The translations under genes and the position numbers were made by a program. Under the pieces are notes generated by a model that saw nothing but the letters and a program-made list of their open reading frames with translations, was not told the origin of the DNA and made no database searches. A DNA stretch of 62,558 bases, counting the filler, from Choristocarpus tenellus KU-1152 (taxonomy: Eukaryota > Protista > Phaeophyceae), in assembly GCA_964200185.2 (NCBI GenBank). It is 11 parts of 11 records of this genome, joined end to end, with 100 filler letters (N's around TTAATTAATTAA, not from the genome) between each part and the next. Parts side by side here need not be neighbours in the genome. Positions count along the whole stretch, not along the records: positions 45,553 to 53,283 come from CAXNAD020005670.1; 10 more parts are not named here. One strand, 5' to 3'. This document shows, in pieces, positions 45,553-53,283 of this stretch (its first letter is position 1; each line of letters starts with the position of its first letter).

Positions 45553-48500
45553 GGGGGGTATATGGGTCGTGCACAATACCCCCACCTGGGCCACGATCAA
45601 CATATCCCCCCCCCTCCCCACCAATGCCACCTCCACCAGAGTTCTGCCCCCCAGAAATGCCCTGAACCCTGCCCATGTGGTCACCCTCATAACCAGCATA
45701 CCTACCACTGCCAGTGCTGGCTCTGGCACCGCCCACAACATCACCTCTTCCACCATAAGGAACTCCGACAGGGGTATCTGCACCACCTACTCTACTACCA
45801 GGACCAGGGCCAGGGCTAGGGCCATAACCACCTGCAGGGTGGGGAGCAGGCGCAACTGGTTCTACGTTTCCCCCCCTCTCATAACCACCACTCCCACCAC
45901 GTCCACTGTAGTTCTGGCTAAAGTTGCCTTCAGCTGCTGGGCCTCTAGATACATCACGTGTCCGGTGCTGGTATTGTTGAGGGGCACCGACTCCTCTCTG
46001 TGCAGGTCCTTGGCCCCCACCATTGCCCCTGCCTGGAGTGCCCCCACCATTGAAACCACCACCCCTGGGAACATTTCTTTCATACTGACTACTGTTGGGG
46101 CCACCGCGATAATCACCGGTGGAACCCTCCCTGTGCCCACTGGGTCCCCCTCGGGATACTCCATAATCAGTCTCTGCTGGACCAACCGGCCGTCTCTCAA
46201 TGCCTCCACCACCCCTACCCGCATAGGCAGGACCTATGCCGCCAGTGCCCACACCCTCACCTCTATACCCGGCTGCGAAGTCCTCATCACCATCATCAAG
46301 GAAAGGGTTTACTTCCCCTCGGAAGGCTCGGCCGCCTTCATCGTCCCCTCGATACATGCCCGCACCACCCCCCCGGTGACCCTCACCAGGATTACTGCCA
46401 CTGTATCTACTACCACCACTGTAGCGCTGCCGACCCTCTCCCCGTCCTACATCACCAATATCACGGCCACCAGACATACCGAGACCTCGTCCTACGTCTC
46501 TCCTAGGAGAGGTTCCATCATCCAGGTAAGAAGGCACATCCTGGCCACTACCCCTGGGTCTACCGCTGCCACTGTAGCCTGACCGAGGACCACTTCTTGG
46601 CCCAGCAACACTGCCTGGTCTCCGGTCATCCAATGGGCCTGACTGCCTACGTTCCATGGGACCGTCTTCGATGTCATACCTGGGGTCTAGGCCATCACCG
46701 CTCATGCCCCTGGCCCCACTCCCACGATGGGGGGGGGCACCCCGTCGGGAGAGAGTCCTGCCAGGCTCGTTGTAGATGCTTTCACCTGGATTTTCTCATA
46801 TAAATGAACAGGATAAAGTCAAACAGTATTTAAGAGGCAGAGTAGGCATTTACAATCAGAGGGCAGAAGGAAGAAAAAAACAATCGGTAGAAATAACACG
46901 AGGGAGATTCTTATCATTCATGCCAAAGACTGAAGACCAAAGTTATTATTGTTTTAATTAAGATTCCCAAAATTACAGGTCCAGGCTTCACTCCCACACA
47001 AAGCACCAGAAAGAGAAGTCTCTTGTAACTAAAATTGCTTCCTTGACCACTTCCAAGAATATACGCAGATGTACCCTCCCAGCAACAGGGCTATCTCGAC
47101 TCTAACTCCACCGTGAGAGTTCCAACAATAATTGAGCATTCGATGCAACTTCACACAATACAAACACCCCACTCACCTCTGACCCCACCTCCATAATGCT
47201 GGTCAGAATACCCATCCTCATATCCACCATCGGGGCCATATACATCATCACCATAGTCCTCATATCCTCTGGGACTAGCACCCAGCTTCTGCTCTGAACC
47301 AGGGCTATAACGTGCTGAGGTGCGACCTTGGCTCCCCATACCATTCCCCCCACCCCTGTAGCCAGAACCACGCCCGCCCCTACCACCACCACGACCACCC
47401 CTGCCGCCACTGGAGGAACGGATAATTAAGGGAGAGGCAGTGCTACCTAGGCCATCTTCTGCATACCCTGCACCAGTTGGTGAGATGGGGAGGGTTATTC
47501 TTCTCACAATTTGGAAGAAAAAATAAAATCTCCTTTTGAACAAATGCAGGAATGCATTGCATTGACACATAACAAAAAGGACAAATTGATCTTTACATAG
47601 GAGCGTCATTTGCATATGAGAGTAACACAAATGCACTAACTTGATCAAAATTTACATAAAGTTGAACTTAGCAAAGGTCATAGATACATCTTGCAGTTTA
47701 TATGAATAGACCAAAGTAGTGCAGGGCAACACTTGAGGAGGGTGGAGCTTCACAAAAATAGTTGGCAATTCACTGATGAGGAATTCCCAAGCAGTGAGGA
47801 ACGGGTTTATGCCTTGGTTTCTCCCAGCAGGCACAATTCTGCCTCTGCAAGAACGGAGACCACATTTTGGACAGACTTTGCAACCGTAACAGCCTGGTAC
47901 GAAGCTTGGGTGTGGTTACTAAATTTACACCTCTAAGGAATAAAATTTGAGAAACATACACATGATATGAGACAACACAGTGCAGGACAAAGGAAACAGA
48001 TAGGTGCACCAAATTATGACAACAAGATCGTAGGTTGAAACTGAATATGGCGCAAGTTTCCCCTCTCAACTCTGGCTCACCCTGTCCCCTTTCATGAAGG
48101 TCGGCAATACCACGATACATGGCACTACCCCTTCCTTTGCCACCCATGTGGTGAGACTCTCTTCCTCCATAGCTGCGGTTTACAGGCATCGGGGCAGCCA
48201 TGGGCTGACCGGGGCCAACCACGCTGTTCCCGCCACGACCCAAGTTGTACCCGCTGTCGTAACCGCGCCCTGATCCACGACCTTCTATTGCACGATTACC
48301 ACGACCGGGACCACGGCCACCGATATTGCCACGTCCAGTCCCACGTCCACCACGGCCTCGACCAGAGCGGGGACTCAACCCAGGAGAGAAGTGTTCTCTG
48401 CCTCCGCCAGGGTCGGAGCGTACATCCATATCGTTCCCAGTCATGAGAGGCTTTCGAGAGTTTTGAGTCTCCCCACGATCAATTGCGTTATTTACCTGAA

Positions 48501-49068
48501 GCTCACGGCCGTGGAACTCGCGGCCGTTGAACTGGGCAATGGCTCGATCGGCTCCTTGCTGATTCTCAAAAGTAACGAAGGCGATTCCCCGTGGGGTGCC
48601 GTCTCTCTGTTTAATGATGCGATGCCAGACAATATTCCCACACGTACTGAATGATTGTACAAGGACATCCTCCGTAACTTTGTAGTGTAGATTACCTATA
48701 AAGAGCTTCACTTGTCCAGGTTCAGTGGGGGGAGGCGCGTTGTCTGGATGCGACCTTGCACTCTTGTCACTGTGATGTAGAGGCACGGGGAGGGAAGCAT
48801 TTGCATGTCCTGAGAATATGAATACTACGGAAACATTGGCATGACGAAGGCTATGGAATCTAGCTAGGAATGTTTACGACGACTCAGGGTAATCGGAGAC
48901 TCACTGTTTCTCATCGAGAGATGCCGTTCTTGGGCGCTTTCTGTCCTCTCGCCCAGGTGTACCGCCGTTTCTCTTTGCATTCACACCATTATTTGGAGGT
49001 CCTCCCTTCATCTGTACATTTTGGGGGGATGAGTCACTTTTGTTCACCACCCCACAATTGTAGCGCAT
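45553..49068 (-). CDS. RRM-domain, RGG/Gly-Tyr-rich RNA-binding protein (exons ~49068-48905, 48769-48081, 47467-47177, 46785-45553; 3' end cut by contig)
   Basis: RNP2 LFIGNL and RNP1 RGIAFVTF, then A..A..FNGREFHGRELQVNNA; GT-AG junctions with consistent phases (2, 1, 1); more than 600 aa of RGG/GY low-complexity tail. The start codon is uncertain. Confidence 0.88.
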
Positions 49069-49601
49069 CTCCCGCCACCCGATACCTTCAGATGAGTATT
49101 ACTCTGCTAAAAAACTTAGGCATACCTCAACCCATAAAAACAGCTTACCATCGAAGTAACACTAGCCTGCAGACTGTCCATACACTGAACAAGTTCCTGG
49201 AAGAGACTTTCCTCCAAACTGCACTCTTTGCCTCCAATTCTTCCTCAGTTCTGTTTAATGTGTTCCTTGGACTTCACATAGGGAAGTGAGGCAGAAAAGG
49301 CCTTCCAAACAAAGATAAAAACTTTTAAAATCGGACTAAAGCGCAACAACAACCAGGAAGAGGATTTCGCTGCCCAAAATAGATCAACACAATCCCAGGG
49401 CTTCATCCCCATAGGTTAAGTGCCCTTATCCTTTTTATTTCACCAATGATTACATTTTCAAAGTCTATCATCTCGTTCTCAGCTTGAGCCTTCCTGAACC
49501 CAATCTCAACTCCCTCAGGCAATCCAACCCTCACAGGTCCCCCCATTTCCACCCCTCACCCAACATTGCCACACTCCTTCCCTACCCTTAGCAACTCAAT
49601 C

Positions 49602-52600
49602 ATGTCTACCCTTCTGAGTACGGACATTAAGTGGGAAAAACCTTCCACCAAGAGGTTTGCTCCACCAGGAGGCAAGACCAGTATATCGCTCGGAAACTAC
49701 AGCGAAGATCCACTTCGTACACCCACGAAGGGCTCGCCGCCCGCGCCAGTTCAAGCTTCCCCCATAGCATCCCCACCCACATTCAAAGCGAGTGCAATCA
49801 GCTCGTCGAAAACGCCGTCGAGCTCGTTGCTTGTTGGAATCGCGGTCCAGGGGACAGAGCCTGTCCGGATCGCCACTCGCACTGCCTTGTCGCGCATGGG
49901 GGCCGAGGTTGTGCTCTACGAGGTGTCGGATCCACTGCAGTTGCCCTTCGCTGCCCAGTGCCTGATTTCCGATGTAGGAGTGTCAGCAGTGATAGCGATC
50001 GGATCCCTTACGGACTTCATTGCGCAATACGACTGGGGTGCAAAAGAGGTAGCCCAGGCCTTAGTACAGAGCTTGCTCCATCTTTCGCTAGCTCAGTCCG
50101 TTCCCGTCGTCAATGGCCTGTGCTTCAAACAGCACACTGCTGCGGAAGTGGCCTTGCTTGGTGGGAGACTTGCATCTGGGGCCATCAGCTTGTCGGACAT
50201 GAAGTCGAAGAAGGTGCCTTACTCCATCGGTAAGACCAACGAAATCTTCTTGCCATTAGATCAACGAACAGCCGATCGAGTCAAACTGTGCAATCCAGAT
50301 AAGAGTGCAATATAGAATCATTTGACACACAATACATTTGAACCTTCTTTCAGTCCAAGTGTTAGAGACCGAACGAGTATGATTTTTGAAATTGAGAAAT
50401 GTTTCTTACATTTAAAGTGTAACCATACTTGTGCATCCACCTGTGGAAATAGGACATGAACCAATTCATGCACTGAAATTGAACTAGGGCTAGATGGTTG
50501 TGTTGTATGAGATTATGCAATGTACATGAAAGTGGTGCCAACCTCATCGTCCTTCAACTTTGTTTCCCTTCTATGAAAATCATTGTTGCGCGTGCTTGAT
50601 CAACGATACCAATATCCTTACCCCCCCTTGGGCCCTCATGGAAAATATCCTCTTTATCAAAGGGGGGCCTTCTATGCCCCCAGTCATGAATTCTCCAAGG
50701 AGTGTTGCAGGGAAAAAGAGTGCTCCTGTTGAAAGAAATATGATGCATTCACGTAAAGGCAGCACTGTGTTTGAGGCGCCAAGAACAGTTCCTCAGGACC
50801 TGACATCGCTTATGCTGGGCCTGCGCACATCACTCAATAACCATGGAGCCAAGTGAGTTTCTTGTTTGTAGTTGTTGTACGGAAAATGCGAGATTACTTG
50901 ATACTTTTTTAACAGAGAAGTTGAAACATTTTACTAAACTTTTCCTCCCAGGTGCTAGCATTGCACCTTCCATGTTATATTTGCACAAAGGAGCAAGCTA
51001 AGTAGTACGTCATAGGAGACATTTGGCTAATGAGAGTGGTGCTAATGACTGTTGTATAAACACCTCATGTCACACGTGCCTTACACTAACAACATCATGC
51101 TACAGTAGTCAATGTTTTAACAACTCATTCTCTATTTTCTGATATGGAGTTGAGTCAAAGTATCTGGGGGGGGAGGGGGTGGTTTGTGAGGGGGCGTCTG
51201 TTTTGGTCAAGCAACTCTTTTTTTTGCCTACATTTCAAATCCGACACGTGCGACCAAATCACACAAGAATGTGAAAATCGAAGAAAGGGTGAAAAACAGA
51301 CGCCGACACCCCCCCCCCCAGATACTTTGACCCAGTTTGAAACAGTGCAACTATTTCCGCTCAGACATTTTTCCACCGAAAAATTTCAAGCTACATGAGA
51401 TATTTTTTCTTATATGTTCACAGTTATAAGCCAGATCTATTGTGAACATGAAAGTTTGTTCATTCAATAATCCCATGGGACTTCTCAAACAAATGATGGA
51501 GTTGCAGGAATATTTCAAGCAAGCAACAGTTGCAGTTTTTGTTTGCATGTATTTCCGGATATAAATCTTAGACTATATTCTATAACAAATTATATGATGT
51601 GTTACTTCAGTGTATGCAGTATTTTGTACTGCATAGTATCAATATAGGTGAGCTTGAAGGCTGCGAGAGGGTTGGGGGGTTGATCATAGAGTTTAAATTG
51701 AATGACTTCATGTACCACAACTATGCCTATCAATGTTGAAGAAGGGTTACATTTAAAATATATTTAACTTGAGCACCTAACTCCTAATGGTATTTTTGAG
51801 GGCTTGACCAAGTATCAGAGCAATGTCTGTACAGAATTCTTGCTCTGATTGCATCCACTTCCTACATATGGCTTGTATGCATAAGGACCAACAGGTTGAT
51901 GTACGGATAGTTTTTTCAAGGCTTGTTGGCATACATTGTTGATTCCTTCCCATATTCTCCCCGTCAGGGAGTACTCACTCACACATGTCCAACATCCAGA
52001 TTGTGAAGTCCACCCAATCGTTCTCCAGTTTTTGTTTATTCTTTGATTCCTCTTGTGCTGTTGAGTCTAGGCTACTGTCACAGGTTGAGCCCCATTTTGG
52101 GGGGGGCAGTGAGGATATGTAAGGTTGGACACACTTATGACTATCATGAGTATGATGTCTTGCACATATTAAGATTTTGTAATAATGCATATATGCATTA
52201 TGCCTGTATTGTTACTTGGGTGGATCCCAGGTTCACAGATTTCTATGTATGTTGGAGGCCAAACAGGAAAAGCCATACTAGTATTGATGTATTACACGTA
52301 TATATTGAGTTCTTCATGATGATGTGTAGACCAACTGTGGATGGACAGATTGCAAAGCAGAGGTGCCAGATGTCAAATGGGATATGAGATAGAAATCGTA
52401 CCAAACCCTCTTCCCCTTTCTCCCACTTAGGGGTGAGGGGGAGGGGTGAGGGGGTGTTTCCTGCTGCCTGTGAGACCAATTCCAAATGGGTATGGAATGT
52501 CAAGAAATGACAGCATAAGCTATGGCAGAATGGTGGAACACACACTTGATATGAAACTCTCCCCATGTTCTGTCCAAATTTTTTGCCGTGTTTTTTTTTT

Positions 52601-53162
52601 AGAGTTTCCACAAACCTTTGGCACTTCATAACTGTGCAACTTGCATTGGTTCTTCTCCTTGTTCCTCCTAAATTTGAAAATACTACATACTCCTCTGACA
52701 TCCTCTCCATCCTCTCCCTCTCCCTCCCTACACATACACACGCAAACACAAACACACACACACAAGAATAGAATATTTGAACATACTTTAAGGTACTAGT
52801 TAATGAGTACAATGTTGCTTTAACAGTTACAAAAGTATGTCTCTTCTTCCTTTCCCACAATTGTACAGGAAAAGGTGAGGGCCCCCCCCCCCCCCCCCCC
52901 CTAATATTTCTGTTCAGCGTGTTATTATTATGTCCCTTTTCTTTCAACATTGGCAGTGTGCGTGTGAATGTTTGTGATAAAATTGTGACAGGGGAATATT
53001 TGGACTGGCACGCAAGTTCCGGATTGGTGACGCCGACGGCAGTGGTGAAATTGACTTCCATGAGTTCCAGGTCTGCATGCGAGATACGCACATGGGTTGG
53101 ACGGAAGACGAGCTCAAGAATGTCTTTGAACTCTTCGACGATGATCACACTGGCTCTATTAG
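49602..53162 (+). CDS. Fusion protein: PPGG (SPIRAL1/Jupiter-like) motif + degenerate lumazine-synthase fold + calcyphosin-like EF-hands (exons 49602-50229, 50663-50852, 52992-53162; 3' end cut by contig)
   Basis: PSTKRFAPPGGKTSISLG; LLVGIAV..ALSRMG..VSDPLQLPFAA..SAVIAIG..QYDW..VPVVNG (RibH pattern); LRTSLNNHGAK|GIFGLARKFRIGDADGSGEIDFHEF..ELKNVFELFDDDHTGSI. Junctions G|GTAAGA to aaag|GG (phase 1) and AA|GTGAGT to gacag|G (phase 2) keep the frame. Confidence 0.82.
51152..51333. mobile_element. MITE family B (diverged interior), intronic, 4-bp TSD AGTT
   Basis: AGTT|GAGTCAAAGTATCTGGGG...CCCCAGATACTTTGACCC|AGTT. Confidence 0.9.
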
Positions 53163-53283
53163 GTACGTAGTGTTGTGTTCGGGAAGGGGGGGGGGGGGGG
53201 GGGGGGGGGGGAAAGAGTTAGGTGGAAGGGAAGAGCAAACGGCGAAAGCACAGGCACCCCCGAACGCAACTGGCGGTCCTGTT

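What the first reader, a model, noticed from the sequence alone, without database searches (positions are those of the whole stretch)
49602..53162. Three-part fusion: microtubule-type PPGG motif + dead lumazine-synthase fold + calcyphosin EF-hands
Seen: three exons splice in frame into one protein. It has (i) PSTKRFAPPGGKTSISLG at 49641-49694, (ii) a ~125-aa segment at ~49827-50207 that follows the RibH pattern element by element (LLVGIAV / TALSRMG / VSDPLQLPFAA / SAVIAIG / QYDW / VPVVNG versus B. subtilis RibH LKIGIVV / DALLRHG / VPGAFEIPFAA / DAIITLG / HYDY / VPVIFG, recalled from memory), and (iii) HGAKGIFGLARKFRIGDADGSGEIDFHE..FELFDDDHTGSI. Established: PPGG-x-S/T-S/I motifs mark the microtubule-associated SPIRAL1 and Jupiter/HN1 families; lumazine synthases form pentamers or icosahedral shells; GxxGIxGLxRxF followed by EF-hands is the calcyphosin N-terminus. 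The RibH active-site elements look lost: no RFN/Phe22 loop, VPG to VSD, no RGxT phosphate loop, His88 to Gln, no obvious Arg127. Inference: a riboflavin-pathway enzyme fold reused as an oligomeric, Ca2+-switched scaffold that cross-links microtubules, possibly in the flagellum. A more speculative option is that it holds a flavin or lumazine pigment, since brown-algal posterior flagella show flavin autofluorescence. The six-frame ORF track splits this gene into three unrelated ORFs, so it is easy to miss. I cannot say whether the architecture is already catalogued in other stramenopiles.
Basis: partly seen in the sequence, partly recalled or inferred. Interest (0 to 1): 0.85.

Follow-up and report, generated by a model that had tools for sequence, protein, structure and literature searches.

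The report
Dead lumazine-synthase domain in microtubule protein
A brown-alga gene joins a short microtubule-binding motif, a catalytically dead copy of a riboflavin-pathway enzyme and a calcium-binding module whose closest solved relatives sit inside ciliary microtubules; the family is conserved in several stramenopile lineages (ochrophyte algae and Phytophthora), and I found no paper on it.

Summary
The piece is a Choristocarpus tenellus contig. A deposited partial protein (CAM9556008.1) equals the three-exon product.

- **Exon 1:** it has a PPGGKTSISLG motif that nearly matches the minimal microtubule-binding peptide of human JPT2. It also has a lumazine-synthase (LS) domain: Pfam PF00885 above its threshold, family profile against solved LS E 4e-14, and an AF2 model (pLDDT 92.6) whose top 50 Foldseek hits are all LS-fold chains (natural or engineered LS, archaeal riboflavin synthase).
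- **Dead enzyme:** the Phe22, phosphate-loop/His88 and Arg127 equivalents are not conserved, so it is a pseudoenzyme.
- **Exons 2-3:** they start a calcyphosin module. The gene runs off the piece.
- **Full-length orthologues** (Ectocarpus, Tribonema, Octactis, Phytophthora; 510-570 aa) add a C-terminal extension and a second PGG motif. Their calcyphosin half best matches luminal microtubule proteins (CAPSL, RIB22, RIB57, DMIP20/21).

My reading is a Ca2+-binding, multivalent microtubule protein of the flagellar apparatus, probably luminal, with the LS domain as an oligomerisation hub (self-association model 0.69, best control 0.02). Localisation, oligomeric state and function are inferred. The flavin-pigment idea has no support.

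The parts
49602..50229 (+). Exon 1 (codons 1-209 plus one base): N-terminal motif region, low-complexity spacer, LS-like domain.
   Evidence: Translation. The N-terminus MSTLLSTD aligns with the family N-termini. X3 contig 49591-50230 has depth 776.
49641..49694 (+). PSTKRFAPPGGKTSISLG, a PPGGK-x-S type putative tubulin-binding motif.
   Evidence: T16, P22, G23 and G24 are invariant and P21 nearly invariant across 15 family members. Compare the minimal microtubule-binding peptide of JPT2, LNPPGGKSSISFY (PMC12773733).
49827..50207 (+). Lumazine-synthase-like domain (residues 76-202), without the catalytic residues.
   Evidence: PF00885 E 2.8e-7, above the gathering score. Family profile against solved LS, E 4e-14. 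AF2 pLDDT 92.6. All top 50 Foldseek hits carry the LS fold, TM about 0.64-0.81. Residue table.
50230..50662 (+). Intron 1 (GT..AG, 433 nt).
   Evidence: Joint in an X3 contig, depth 639 against intron depth 11.5.
50663..50852 (+). Exon 2: disordered Pro/Ser-rich linker, then the first helix of the calcyphosin module (DLTSLMLGLRTSLNNHGAK).
   Evidence: Translation. The Ectocarpus orthologue aligns with CAPSL from this helix onward. The linker is disordered in the AF2 model of the orthologue.
50853..52991 (+). Intron 2 (GT..AG, 2139 nt); contains a MITE-like repeat.
   Evidence: X3 contig bridges 50852/52992 with 171 and 191 letters on the two sides.
52992..53162 (+). Exon 3: GIFGLARKFRI, EF-hand 1 (loop at 53029-53064) and the first half of EF-hand 2 (from 53137).
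   Evidence: Pfam EF-hand_1 E 1.1e-10. Canonical loop DADGSGEIDFHE.
53163..53283 (+). Start of intron 3 (GTACGT donor), running to the edge of the piece. About 220 codons of the gene are missing.
   Evidence: The X3 contig ends exactly at 53162. Orthologues continue as ..(S/D)Y(D/E)EF.., while read-through gives unrelated residues. Full-length orthologues are 510-570 aa.

Best explanation
The gene encodes the Choristocarpus orthologue of a protein family found in several stramenopile lineages; I found no paper on it.

**Domain order in full-length members**
1. N-terminal PPGGK(S/T)SIS(F/L)G motif.
2. Disordered spacer.
3. Lumazine-synthase-like pseudoenzyme domain.
4. Disordered linker.
5. Calcyphosin/CAPSL-type EF-hand module.
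6. A roughly 60-aa C-terminal extension, also found in the trypanosomatid inner protein DMIP21.
7. A terminal PGG-x-S-x-L-x-(L/F)-G motif.

**Shown here**
- The splicing.
- Homology and fold of each module.
- Loss of the LS catalytic residues.
- The family's occurrence in brown algae, Phaeothamnion, Tribonema, Mallomonas, Octactis and Phytophthora.

**Inferred**
- The protein binds microtubules of the flagellar apparatus, most likely from the lumen. The two terminal motifs would contact beta-tubulin as proposed for JPT2, and the calcyphosin module would contact alpha-tubulin as CAPSL does.
- The LS-like domain makes no lumazine. It serves as a ring-forming oligomerisation hub that multiplies the tubulin-binding elements, much as tandem PPGG repeats do in other proteins found in the same search.
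- Canonical EF loops make Ca2+ binding likely.
For: - **Splice junctions** appear in RNA-like contigs, and the deposited protein P0001 is identical to the spliced product.
- **LS homology:** PF00885 is above the gathering score in the window protein and in four of the five orthologues tested. The fifth, the Mallomonas short form P0006, scores 22.7 against the 26.7 cutoff. The profile hits solved LS over its full length at E 4e-14. The AF2 and Foldseek results show the LS fold.
- **Loss of enzyme features:** TIGR00114 scores 19.5 against its 84.6 cutoff. The Phe22, RGxTxH88 and Arg127 equivalents are variable or absent.
- **Self-association model of the LS-like domain:** score 0.69, best of 3 controls 0.02. 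The runs share at least 87% of contacts and partner pLDDT is at least 83. The mark was reached by 21 of 30 proteins solved as pairs of one chain and 0 of 23 solved as single chains. The job used four copies, while the calibration used two. The interface uses helix alpha-3, as in LS rings.
- **Calcyphosin half of the Ectocarpus orthologue against solved structures:** CAPSL 2.6e-38, RIB22 1.5e-36, RIB57 3e-35, human calcyphosin 1.4e-32, DMIP20 3.5e-22, DMIP21 1.8e-18.
- **C-terminal extension:** it matches DMIP21 and the 9e2g EF-hand protein.
- **Literature:** CAPSL is a luminal alpha-tubulin binder (bioRxiv 10.64898/2026.06.11.731632). RIB22 is an A-tubule inner protein. The DMIPs are doublet inner proteins (PMC7617938). 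The PPGGK*S motif of JPT2 is necessary for microtubule localisation, and a 13-residue peptide containing it localises to microtubules (PMC12773733).
- **Distribution:** as far as I know, all named taxa that carry the family make flagellated cells.
Against: - There are no localisation, proteome or binding data for any family member. The flagellar link rests on homology and on the taxa that carry the family.
- The look-ups in flagellar-gene supplements found nothing. Those searches went by name only.
- The predicted interface is not more conserved than the rest of the domain (permutation p 0.28). The complex score may come from the model's memory of LS pentamers.
- Pfam's JUPITER model gives no hit, and no named JPT or SPIRAL1 protein was recovered with the motif-only relatives. 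The motif link is therefore a resemblance, not shown homology.
- Plant SPIRAL1 and fly Jupiter, which carry similar motifs, act on cytoplasmic microtubules (from my own knowledge).
- A pentameric hub inside a microtubule lumen has no precedent that I know of.
Confidence: 0.55

Rival explanations
1. It is a regulator of cytoplasmic microtubules (cortical, spindle or plus-end) of the SPIRAL1/Jupiter type. It binds the outer lattice or the ends rather than acting as a flagellar or luminal protein. The LS-like domain still serves as a scaffold.
For: The PPGG motifs at both termini mirror the two-motif layout I recall for SPIRAL1. Small proteins with only the N- and C-terminal motifs exist among the search hits (P0030, P0031). 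A short form without calcyphosin exists in Mallomonas. Expression in run X3 is high, and that run is not known to come from zoids.
Against: The calcyphosin half has its best solved matches in axonemal inner proteins. The C-terminal extension is shared with DMIP21. JPT2's own motif is reported as luminal.
Confidence: 0.25
2. It is a Ca2+ sensor or signalling protein with no direct microtubule binding. The PPGG motifs and the LS-like domain would serve other partners.
For: Canonical EF-hand loops. Human calcyphosin was first described as a signalling phosphoprotein (from my own knowledge).
Against: The motif is strictly conserved and matches a tested microtubule-binding peptide. CAPSL binds microtubules directly in vitro.
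Confidence: 0.1
3. The LS-like domain holds a flavin or lumazine chromophore and contributes to the green autofluorescence of the posterior flagellum.
For: The S. pombe LS was solved with bound riboflavin (PDB 1kyv title). Several carrier lineages (brown algae, xanthophytes, synurophytes) have autofluorescent flagella, as far as I recall.
Against: The position of the stacking aromatic (Phe22 in B. subtilis) is Gly/Ser/Glu/Ala and is not conserved. The ribityl and phosphate loops are replaced. The family is present with the same architecture in Phytophthora, which is non-photosynthetic.
Confidence: 0.05
4. It is an active, Ca2+-regulated lumazine synthase.
For: The PF00885 hit is above the gathering score. 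JGI names one short-form relative a DMRL synthase.
Against: TIGR00114 scores 19.5 against an 84.6 cutoff. The Phe22, His88 and Arg127 equivalents and the phosphate loop are missing across the family.
Confidence: 0.03

Closest known systems
CAPSL / calcyphosin (human CAPS, PDB 3e3r; CAPSL, PDB 11yj)
   Same: The C-terminal half of the Ectocarpus orthologue aligns end to end with them, from the pre-EF helix and the G-I-x-G-L-x-R-x-F-R segment through the EF-hands (E 2.6e-38 and 1.4e-32). CAPSL is a luminal binder of alpha-tubulin.
   Different: CAPS and CAPSL are about 200-aa single-module proteins. Here the module is preceded by a PPGG motif and an LS-like domain, and is followed by an extra domain and a second motif. 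Only the first ~80 residues of the module lie in this piece.
Tetrahymena RIB22/RIB57/RIB35/CFAP161A and trypanosomatid DMIP20/DMIP21 (doublet microtubule inner proteins)
   Same: They carry calcyphosin-type modules, in several cases fused to other domains. DMIP21 and the 9e2g EF-hand protein also share the C-terminal extension.
   Different: None of them matched the LS-like or PPGG region in the PDB searches made here. The position of the stramenopile protein in the axoneme is unknown.
JPT2/HN1L, JPT1/HN1, Drosophila Jupiter; plant SPIRAL1
   Same: A PPGG-K-x-S-I-S-(F/L) type motif, present at both ends of the full-length family members. In JPT2 a 13-residue peptide with this motif localises to microtubules.
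   Different: There is no detectable homology outside the motif: no Pfam JUPITER hit and no named JPT or SPR1 protein among the relatives of the motif-only proteins. Those proteins are small and disordered, with no folded domains.
6,7-dimethyl-8-ribityllumazine synthase (RibH; e.g. B. subtilis 1rvv, Brucella 1xn1/1t13)
   Same: Same fold and detectable homology over the whole domain. The predicted ring-type self-association uses helix alpha-3.
   Different: The catalytic and substrate-binding residues are not conserved. It scores far below the equivalog cutoff. It is embedded in a multidomain eukaryotic protein.
Archaeal pentameric riboflavin synthase (PDB 2b98/2b99)
   Same: It is a precedent for the LS fold being reused for another role.
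   Different: It is still an enzyme of the riboflavin pathway. Here no enzymatic role is expected.

Membership tests
Lumazine synthase (PF00885 / RibH) | Sequence match to the family model above the curated threshold | tested here: met
   PF00885 at 31 bits against 26.7 for the window protein. Four orthologues score 29-45 bits; the Mallomonas short form P0006 scores 22.7, below the cutoff. The family profile hits solved LS at E 4e-14.
Lumazine synthase (PF00885 / RibH) | Flavodoxin-like LS fold | tested here: met
   AF2 pLDDT 92.6. All top 50 Foldseek PDB hits are LS-fold chains (natural or engineered LS, archaeal riboflavin synthase), TM about 0.64-0.81. The atlas hit is a PF00885 cluster, TM 0.76.
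Lumazine synthase (PF00885 / RibH) | Equivalog-level score (same function) | tested here: not met
   TIGR00114 at 19.5 bits against a cutoff of 84.6; NF009084 at 16.7 against 160.
Lumazine synthase (PF00885 / RibH) | Substrate and catalytic residues (B. subtilis Phe22, the Gly-Ala-Thr phosphate loop, His88, Arg127) | tested here: not met
   Mapped through the 1rvv alignment onto 25 family members. None is conserved. By the profile register, His88 corresponds to Gly in Choristocarpus, Cys in other brown algae and Gln in Phytophthora.
Lumazine synthase (PF00885 / RibH) | Pentameric (or higher) assembly | tested here: inconclusive
   The four-copy model gives 0.69 against a best control of 0.02, as a ring using helix alpha-3. 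This may be memory of LS pentamers, a pentamer could not be requested, and the interface is not extra-conserved.
Calcyphosin / CAPSL | Full-length homology including the pre-EF helix and the G-I-x-G-L-x-R-x-F-R segment | tested here: met
   Ectocarpus orthologue against CAPSL 2.6e-38 and CAPS 1.4e-32, aligned end to end. The window fragment aligns in register with CAPSL residues 29-96 (E 4.7e-9) but scores no better than generic EF-hand proteins.
Calcyphosin / CAPSL | Four EF-hands in one module | not testable with these tools
   Only EF-hand 1 and half of EF-hand 2 lie before the edge of the piece at 53283. A loop-pattern scan found three EF-type loops in Ectocarpus, P0008 and P. infestans, and two in Tribonema and Octactis.
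Calcyphosin / CAPSL | Binding to the luminal face of alpha-tubulin | not testable with these tools
   Known for CAPSL.
Jupiter/HN1 (JPT) and SPIRAL1 | PPGG-K-x-S microtubule-binding motif | tested here: met
   APPGGKTSISLG at 49659-49694. It is invariant across the family. Compare JPT2 LNPPGGKSSISFY.
Jupiter/HN1 (JPT) and SPIRAL1 | Family-level sequence homology beyond the motif | tested here: not met
   No Pfam JUPITER hit at E up to 10. The 50 relatives of the motif-only protein P0030 carry no family name.

The most novel reading that the evidence does not exclude
The LS-like domain forms a pentameric hub that sits in the lumen of flagellar, transition-zone or basal-body microtubules. Through its ~45-aa flexible linkers it tethers five wall-bound CAPSL-like modules and ten PPGG motifs. 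That would be a new architecture for a microtubule inner protein. To my knowledge it would also be the first structural, non-enzymatic use of the lumazine-synthase fold in a eukaryotic cytoskeleton.
Probability: 0.2. Interest if true: 0.85.

Novelty: new variant of a known kind. Interest (0 to 1): 0.66.

Why it matters
**Pseudoenzyme.** Lumazine synthase is known as an enzyme and as an engineered nanocage. A naturally dead copy built into a cytoskeletal, Ca2+-binding protein would be a clear case of pseudoenzyme co-option.

**Microtubule inner proteins.** The family joins two modules that recent work places inside microtubules: the PPGGK*S motif of JPT2 and calcyphosin-like proteins such as CAPSL. 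It is therefore a ready-made candidate for a stramenopile-specific inner protein. I know of no high-resolution axoneme structure from this group.

**Testability.** It is conserved in Phytophthora, whose zoospores spread crop disease and which can be transformed, and in Ectocarpus. The hypothesis can be tested directly in both.

Tried and rejected

- The word-indexed search with the N-terminal 200 aa of the Tribonema protein found only 3 proteins.
- The ESM Atlas feature search gave no usable hit.
- Pfam gave nothing for the C-terminal extension.

**Literature**
- No paper links calcyphosin with lumazine synthase.
- No paper cites the accessions CBN74096, D8LDM0, D0ND90, XP_002902877 or PHYSODRAFT_317860.
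- Name searches in the supplements of the brown-algal genome paper and of the oomycete flagellar-gene paper found nothing. These went by name only, so they are not evidence of absence.

**Tests that did not help**
- Interface-versus-rest conservation did not support the oligomer (p 0.28).
- The search from the motif-only protein P0030 recovered 50 unnamed relatives and no named JPT or SPIRAL1 protein.

**Rejected readings**
- A transcript ending at the read-through stop at 50315: intron 1 depth is about 1.5% of exon depth.

**Could not be done**
- A check for a separate canonical ribH in this genome. Only this 7.7-kb piece is available, and no eukaryotic genome collection is searchable here.
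Full report
**What is in the sequence.** The piece (45553-53283) is eukaryotic, with GC-richer exons and AT-richer introns.
- An ORF starts at ATG 49602 and runs to a GT donor at 50230.
- A second coding stretch runs from 50663, just after an AG, to a GTGAGT donor at 50853.
- A third runs from 52992, after an AG, to a GTACGT donor at 53163.
- I translated and searched these exon by exon, by reference.
- The exhaustive protein search returned a deposited protein that equals the three-exon product. It is P0001 = CAM9556008.1, 'unnamed protein product, partial [Choristocarpus tenellus]', 331 aa, on a 7731-bp contig, which is the size of this piece. I used that stored protein where a whole product was needed.

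**Splicing.** Three public runs hold the stretch.
- X1 and X2 have flat depth (about 15 and 7) and no exon joints, so they behave as DNA.
- X3 has depth of about 776 on exon 1, about 758 on exons 2 and 3, and 0-11 in the introns. It carries contigs joined at 50229/50663 and 50852/52992, both GT..AG.
- The second joint is bridged by 171 and 191 letters. The first has only 28 letters on its shorter side, just under the tool's 31-letter rule. The contig ends (49591-50230 and 50662-50852) and the depth step agree with it.
- Intron-1 retention is about 1.5% of exon depth, so a product ending at the read-through stop at 50315 is minor.
- The run is not labelled as RNA. That it is RNA is my inference from its behaviour.

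**The N-terminal motif.** Residues 14-31 read PSTKRFAPPGGKTSISLG.
- In an alignment of 15 relatives, T16, P22, G23 and G24 are invariant and P21 nearly so. The first residues (MSTL-x-S-x-D) are also shared.
- Full-length relatives end with a second copy of the motif, for example ..QAPGGKSNLVLG in Tribonema and ..GPGGNSSLVLG in Ectocarpus.
- The same search also returned proteins made of the two terminal motifs only (105-118 aa) and proteins with four to seven tandem copies.
- In human JPT2 the PPGGK*S repeats are needed for microtubule localisation. The 13-residue C-terminal peptide LNPPGGKSSISFY localises to microtubules, and the authors place JPT2 in the lumen near the taxane site (PMC12773733).
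- The likeness stops at the motif. Pfam's JUPITER model gives no hit, and no named JPT or SPIRAL1 protein appeared among the motif-only relatives.

**The lumazine-synthase-like domain.** Several independent lines show that residues 76-202 are a true LS homologue.
- Exon 1 hits PF00885 at E 2.8e-7, 31 bits, above the 26.7-bit gathering score.
- Four orthologues do the same at 29-45 bits. In P. infestans the match covers model positions 2-137 of 139. The Mallomonas short form P0006 falls just below the cutoff at 22.7 bits.
- A profile of 25 family domains (A2) matches solved lumazine synthases over their whole length, best E 4.3e-14. All but one of the 50 significant hits are LS-fold proteins: natural or engineered LS and archaeal riboflavin synthase.
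- The AF2 model has pLDDT 92.6 with the expected beta-alpha order.
- All top 50 Foldseek matches in the PDB are LS-fold chains, TM about 0.64-0.81. The atlas match is a PF00885 cluster.

**The domain is not an ordinary enzyme.**
- NCBI's equivalog model scores 19.5 bits against a cutoff of 84.6.
- The printed alignment to B. subtilis LS (1rvv) reproduces the usual numbering (Phe22, His88, Arg127). I used it to read the corresponding columns in all 25 sequences.
  - The Arg21-Phe22-Asn23 turn is Gln-Gly-Thr here, and elsewhere Glu/Ser/Ala/Asp.
  - Val-Pro-Gly-Ala-Phe-Glu becomes Val-Ser-Asp-Pro-Leu-Gln.
  - The Ile-Arg-Gly-Ala-Thr-Thr-His phosphate loop is replaced by short acidic or variable stretches.
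  - Arg127 is Glu/Asp/Ala in brown algae. Phytophthora has an Arg one column away.
QYDW against HYDY is probably not.
  - The pairwise alignment to the Aquifex LS did pair the Gln with His88.
  - The profile alignment and the model's helix alpha-3 place His88 opposite Gly146 of P0001.
  - The other brown algae read DAHWCSKE there, and Choristocarpus has a private three-residue insertion.
  - Either way, the catalytic His is gone.

**Self-association.** A four-copy model of the domain gave a score of 0.69 (runs 0.71, 0.67, 0.69), with the best of 3 controls at 0.02.
- The runs share at least 87% of contacts, and partner pLDDT is at least 83.
- The mark was reached by 21 of 30 proteins solved as pairs of one chain and 0 of 23 solved as single chains.
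- The calibration used two copies, not four, and its counts are for microbes.
- The contacts form a closed ring through helix alpha-3 and the alpha-2 region, as in LS rings.
- The tool warns that such a pass may be memory of solved LS pentamers.
- The interface columns are not more conserved than the rest (p 0.28).
- I therefore treat oligomerisation as likely but unproven.

**The calcyphosin half.** Exon 2 codes for a Pro/Ser-rich linker and a helix. Exon 3 codes for GIFGLARKFRI, a canonical EF loop (DADGSGEIDFHE) and the start of a second loop.
- On this fragment alone, CAPSL aligns in register (E 4.7e-9) but scores no better than centrin or calmodulin.
- The full-length Ectocarpus orthologue settles the assignment. 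Residues 225-551 match CAPSL (11yj) at 2.6e-38, Tetrahymena RIB22 at 1.5e-36 and RIB57 at 3e-35, and human calcyphosin (3e3r) at 1.4e-32.
- They also match DMIP20 at 3.5e-22, DMIP21 at 1.8e-18, and RIB35 and CFAP161A.
- About 60 residues after the calcyphosin module (RRVL-x-x-(H/R)-x-DG..EE(I/V)K..QG(I/L)) match the 9e2g EF-hand protein and DMIP21. They have no Pfam family.
- CAPSL is reported as the main luminal protein of mammalian transition-zone doublets. It binds alpha-tubulin 1:1 and also does so in vitro (bioRxiv 10.64898/2026.06.11.731632).
- RIB22 is an A-tubule inner protein that depends on RIB72A. The DMIPs are trypanosomatid doublet inner proteins (PMC7617938).

**The family.**
- Long form (510-570 aa): Ectocarpus (CBN74096.1, 'conserved unknown protein'), Pylaiella, Cladosiphon, Nemacystus, Tribonema minus, Octactis speculum and many Phytophthora species, including the P. 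infestans 'calcyphosin-like protein'.
- A fragment comes from Phaeothamnion.
- Short form (260-290 aa): motif, LS-like domain, motif, with no calcyphosin. It occurs in Mallomonas and in unnamed metagenomic proteins.
- The AF2 model of the Ectocarpus protein shows beads on a string.
  - Disordered: residues 1-78, 209-251 and 499-551.
  - Folded: the LS-like domain (85-206) and the calcyphosin module (257-440).
  - Lower confidence: a small domain at 454-499.
- I found no paper on the family.

**How it most likely works.**
- *Shown:* one spliced gene, the three modules, loss of the catalytic residues, and conservation in ochrophyte algae and Phytophthora.
- *Inferred:* the protein binds microtubules through two kinds of element whose nearest studied relatives act on the luminal face. 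The dead LS domain multiplies them by forming a ring, which is an alternative to the tandem PPGG repeats seen in other hits of the same search. The EF-hands bind Ca2+.
- My odds are roughly as follows.

| Claim | Odds |
|---|---|
| Non-enzymatic LS domain | 0.9 |
| Microtubule binding | 0.65 |
| Flagellar apparatus | 0.55 |
| Luminal location | 0.4 |
| Ring oligomer | 0.5 |

- The main rival is a cytoplasmic SPIRAL1-like role.
- The flavin-pigment and active-enzyme readings are unlikely, for the reasons given above.

**Verdict.** The functional reading is partly supported and shifts from 'external cross-linker' towards 'microtubule inner protein with an oligomerisation hub'. The architecture is already present, unnamed, in databases, so the novelty lies in recognising it and in the testable hypothesis. 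It is a new variant of the calcyphosin-type microtubule proteins.

Noticed in passing
window 51151-51334 (intron 2): A MITE-like element of about 184 bp with 26-nt terminal inverted repeats (92% complementary), plus an inner 12-nt inverted pair. The summed contig depth there is enormous (up to about 130,000 against about 15 around it), and many loose ends run into other sequence. It looks like a very abundant dispersed repeat of this genome.
   Followed up: partly
window 52735-52765, 52881-52902, 53187-53212: An AC-rich microsatellite, a C run of about 22 nt and a G run of about 26 nt flank exon 3. The C run produces spurious joints to the MITE's C-rich end in the laid contigs. The G run probably explains why the assembly contig ends soon after.
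   Followed up: no
window 47770-48786, minus strand (and 47151-47648, minus strand): The upstream neighbour on the opposite strand codes for an RRM protein (PF00076, E 2.7e-19) with RGG repeats. A further Arg/Gly-rich ORF downstream of it may be another exon of the same gene.
   Followed up: partly
window 45553-46705, minus strand: A long Gly/Arg/Pro-rich ORF is cut by the edge of the piece. It has no Pfam family and looks like a low-complexity protein of unknown kind.
   Followed up: partly
window 53163-53168: The deposited protein P0001 ends in ..GSIRY, which reads through the GTACGT donor. Orthologues read ..(S/D)Y(D/E)EF.. at that point, and the RNA-like contig stops at 53162. The last two residues of the deposited model are therefore probably intronic.
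   Followed up: partly
P0064:436-499 (Ectocarpus orthologue); also P0049, P0008, Phytophthora proteins: A small conserved domain with no Pfam family follows the calcyphosin module (RRVL-x-x-(H/R)-x-DG..EE(I/V)K..QG(I/L)). It is shared with the trypanosomatid inner protein DMIP21 and a 9e2g/9e5c EF-hand protein.
   Followed up: partly
P0030, P0031 (105-118 aa); P0005, P0013, P0014, P0019, P0025, P0027 and others: A large unnamed protist family of small proteins carries the same N-terminal and C-terminal PPGG motifs. Other proteins carry three to seven tandem PPGG repeats. None has any annotation.
   Followed up: partly
P0006, P0010 (Mallomonas), P0032, P0035, P0045: A short form of the family has the motif, the LS-like domain and the motif, with no calcyphosin module. 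JGI names one of them (P0045) a DMRL synthase, which is probably a misannotation.
   Followed up: partly
run X3: This run has no recorded library type but behaves as RNA on this gene: a high exon-to-intron depth ratio and spliced contigs.
   Followed up: no
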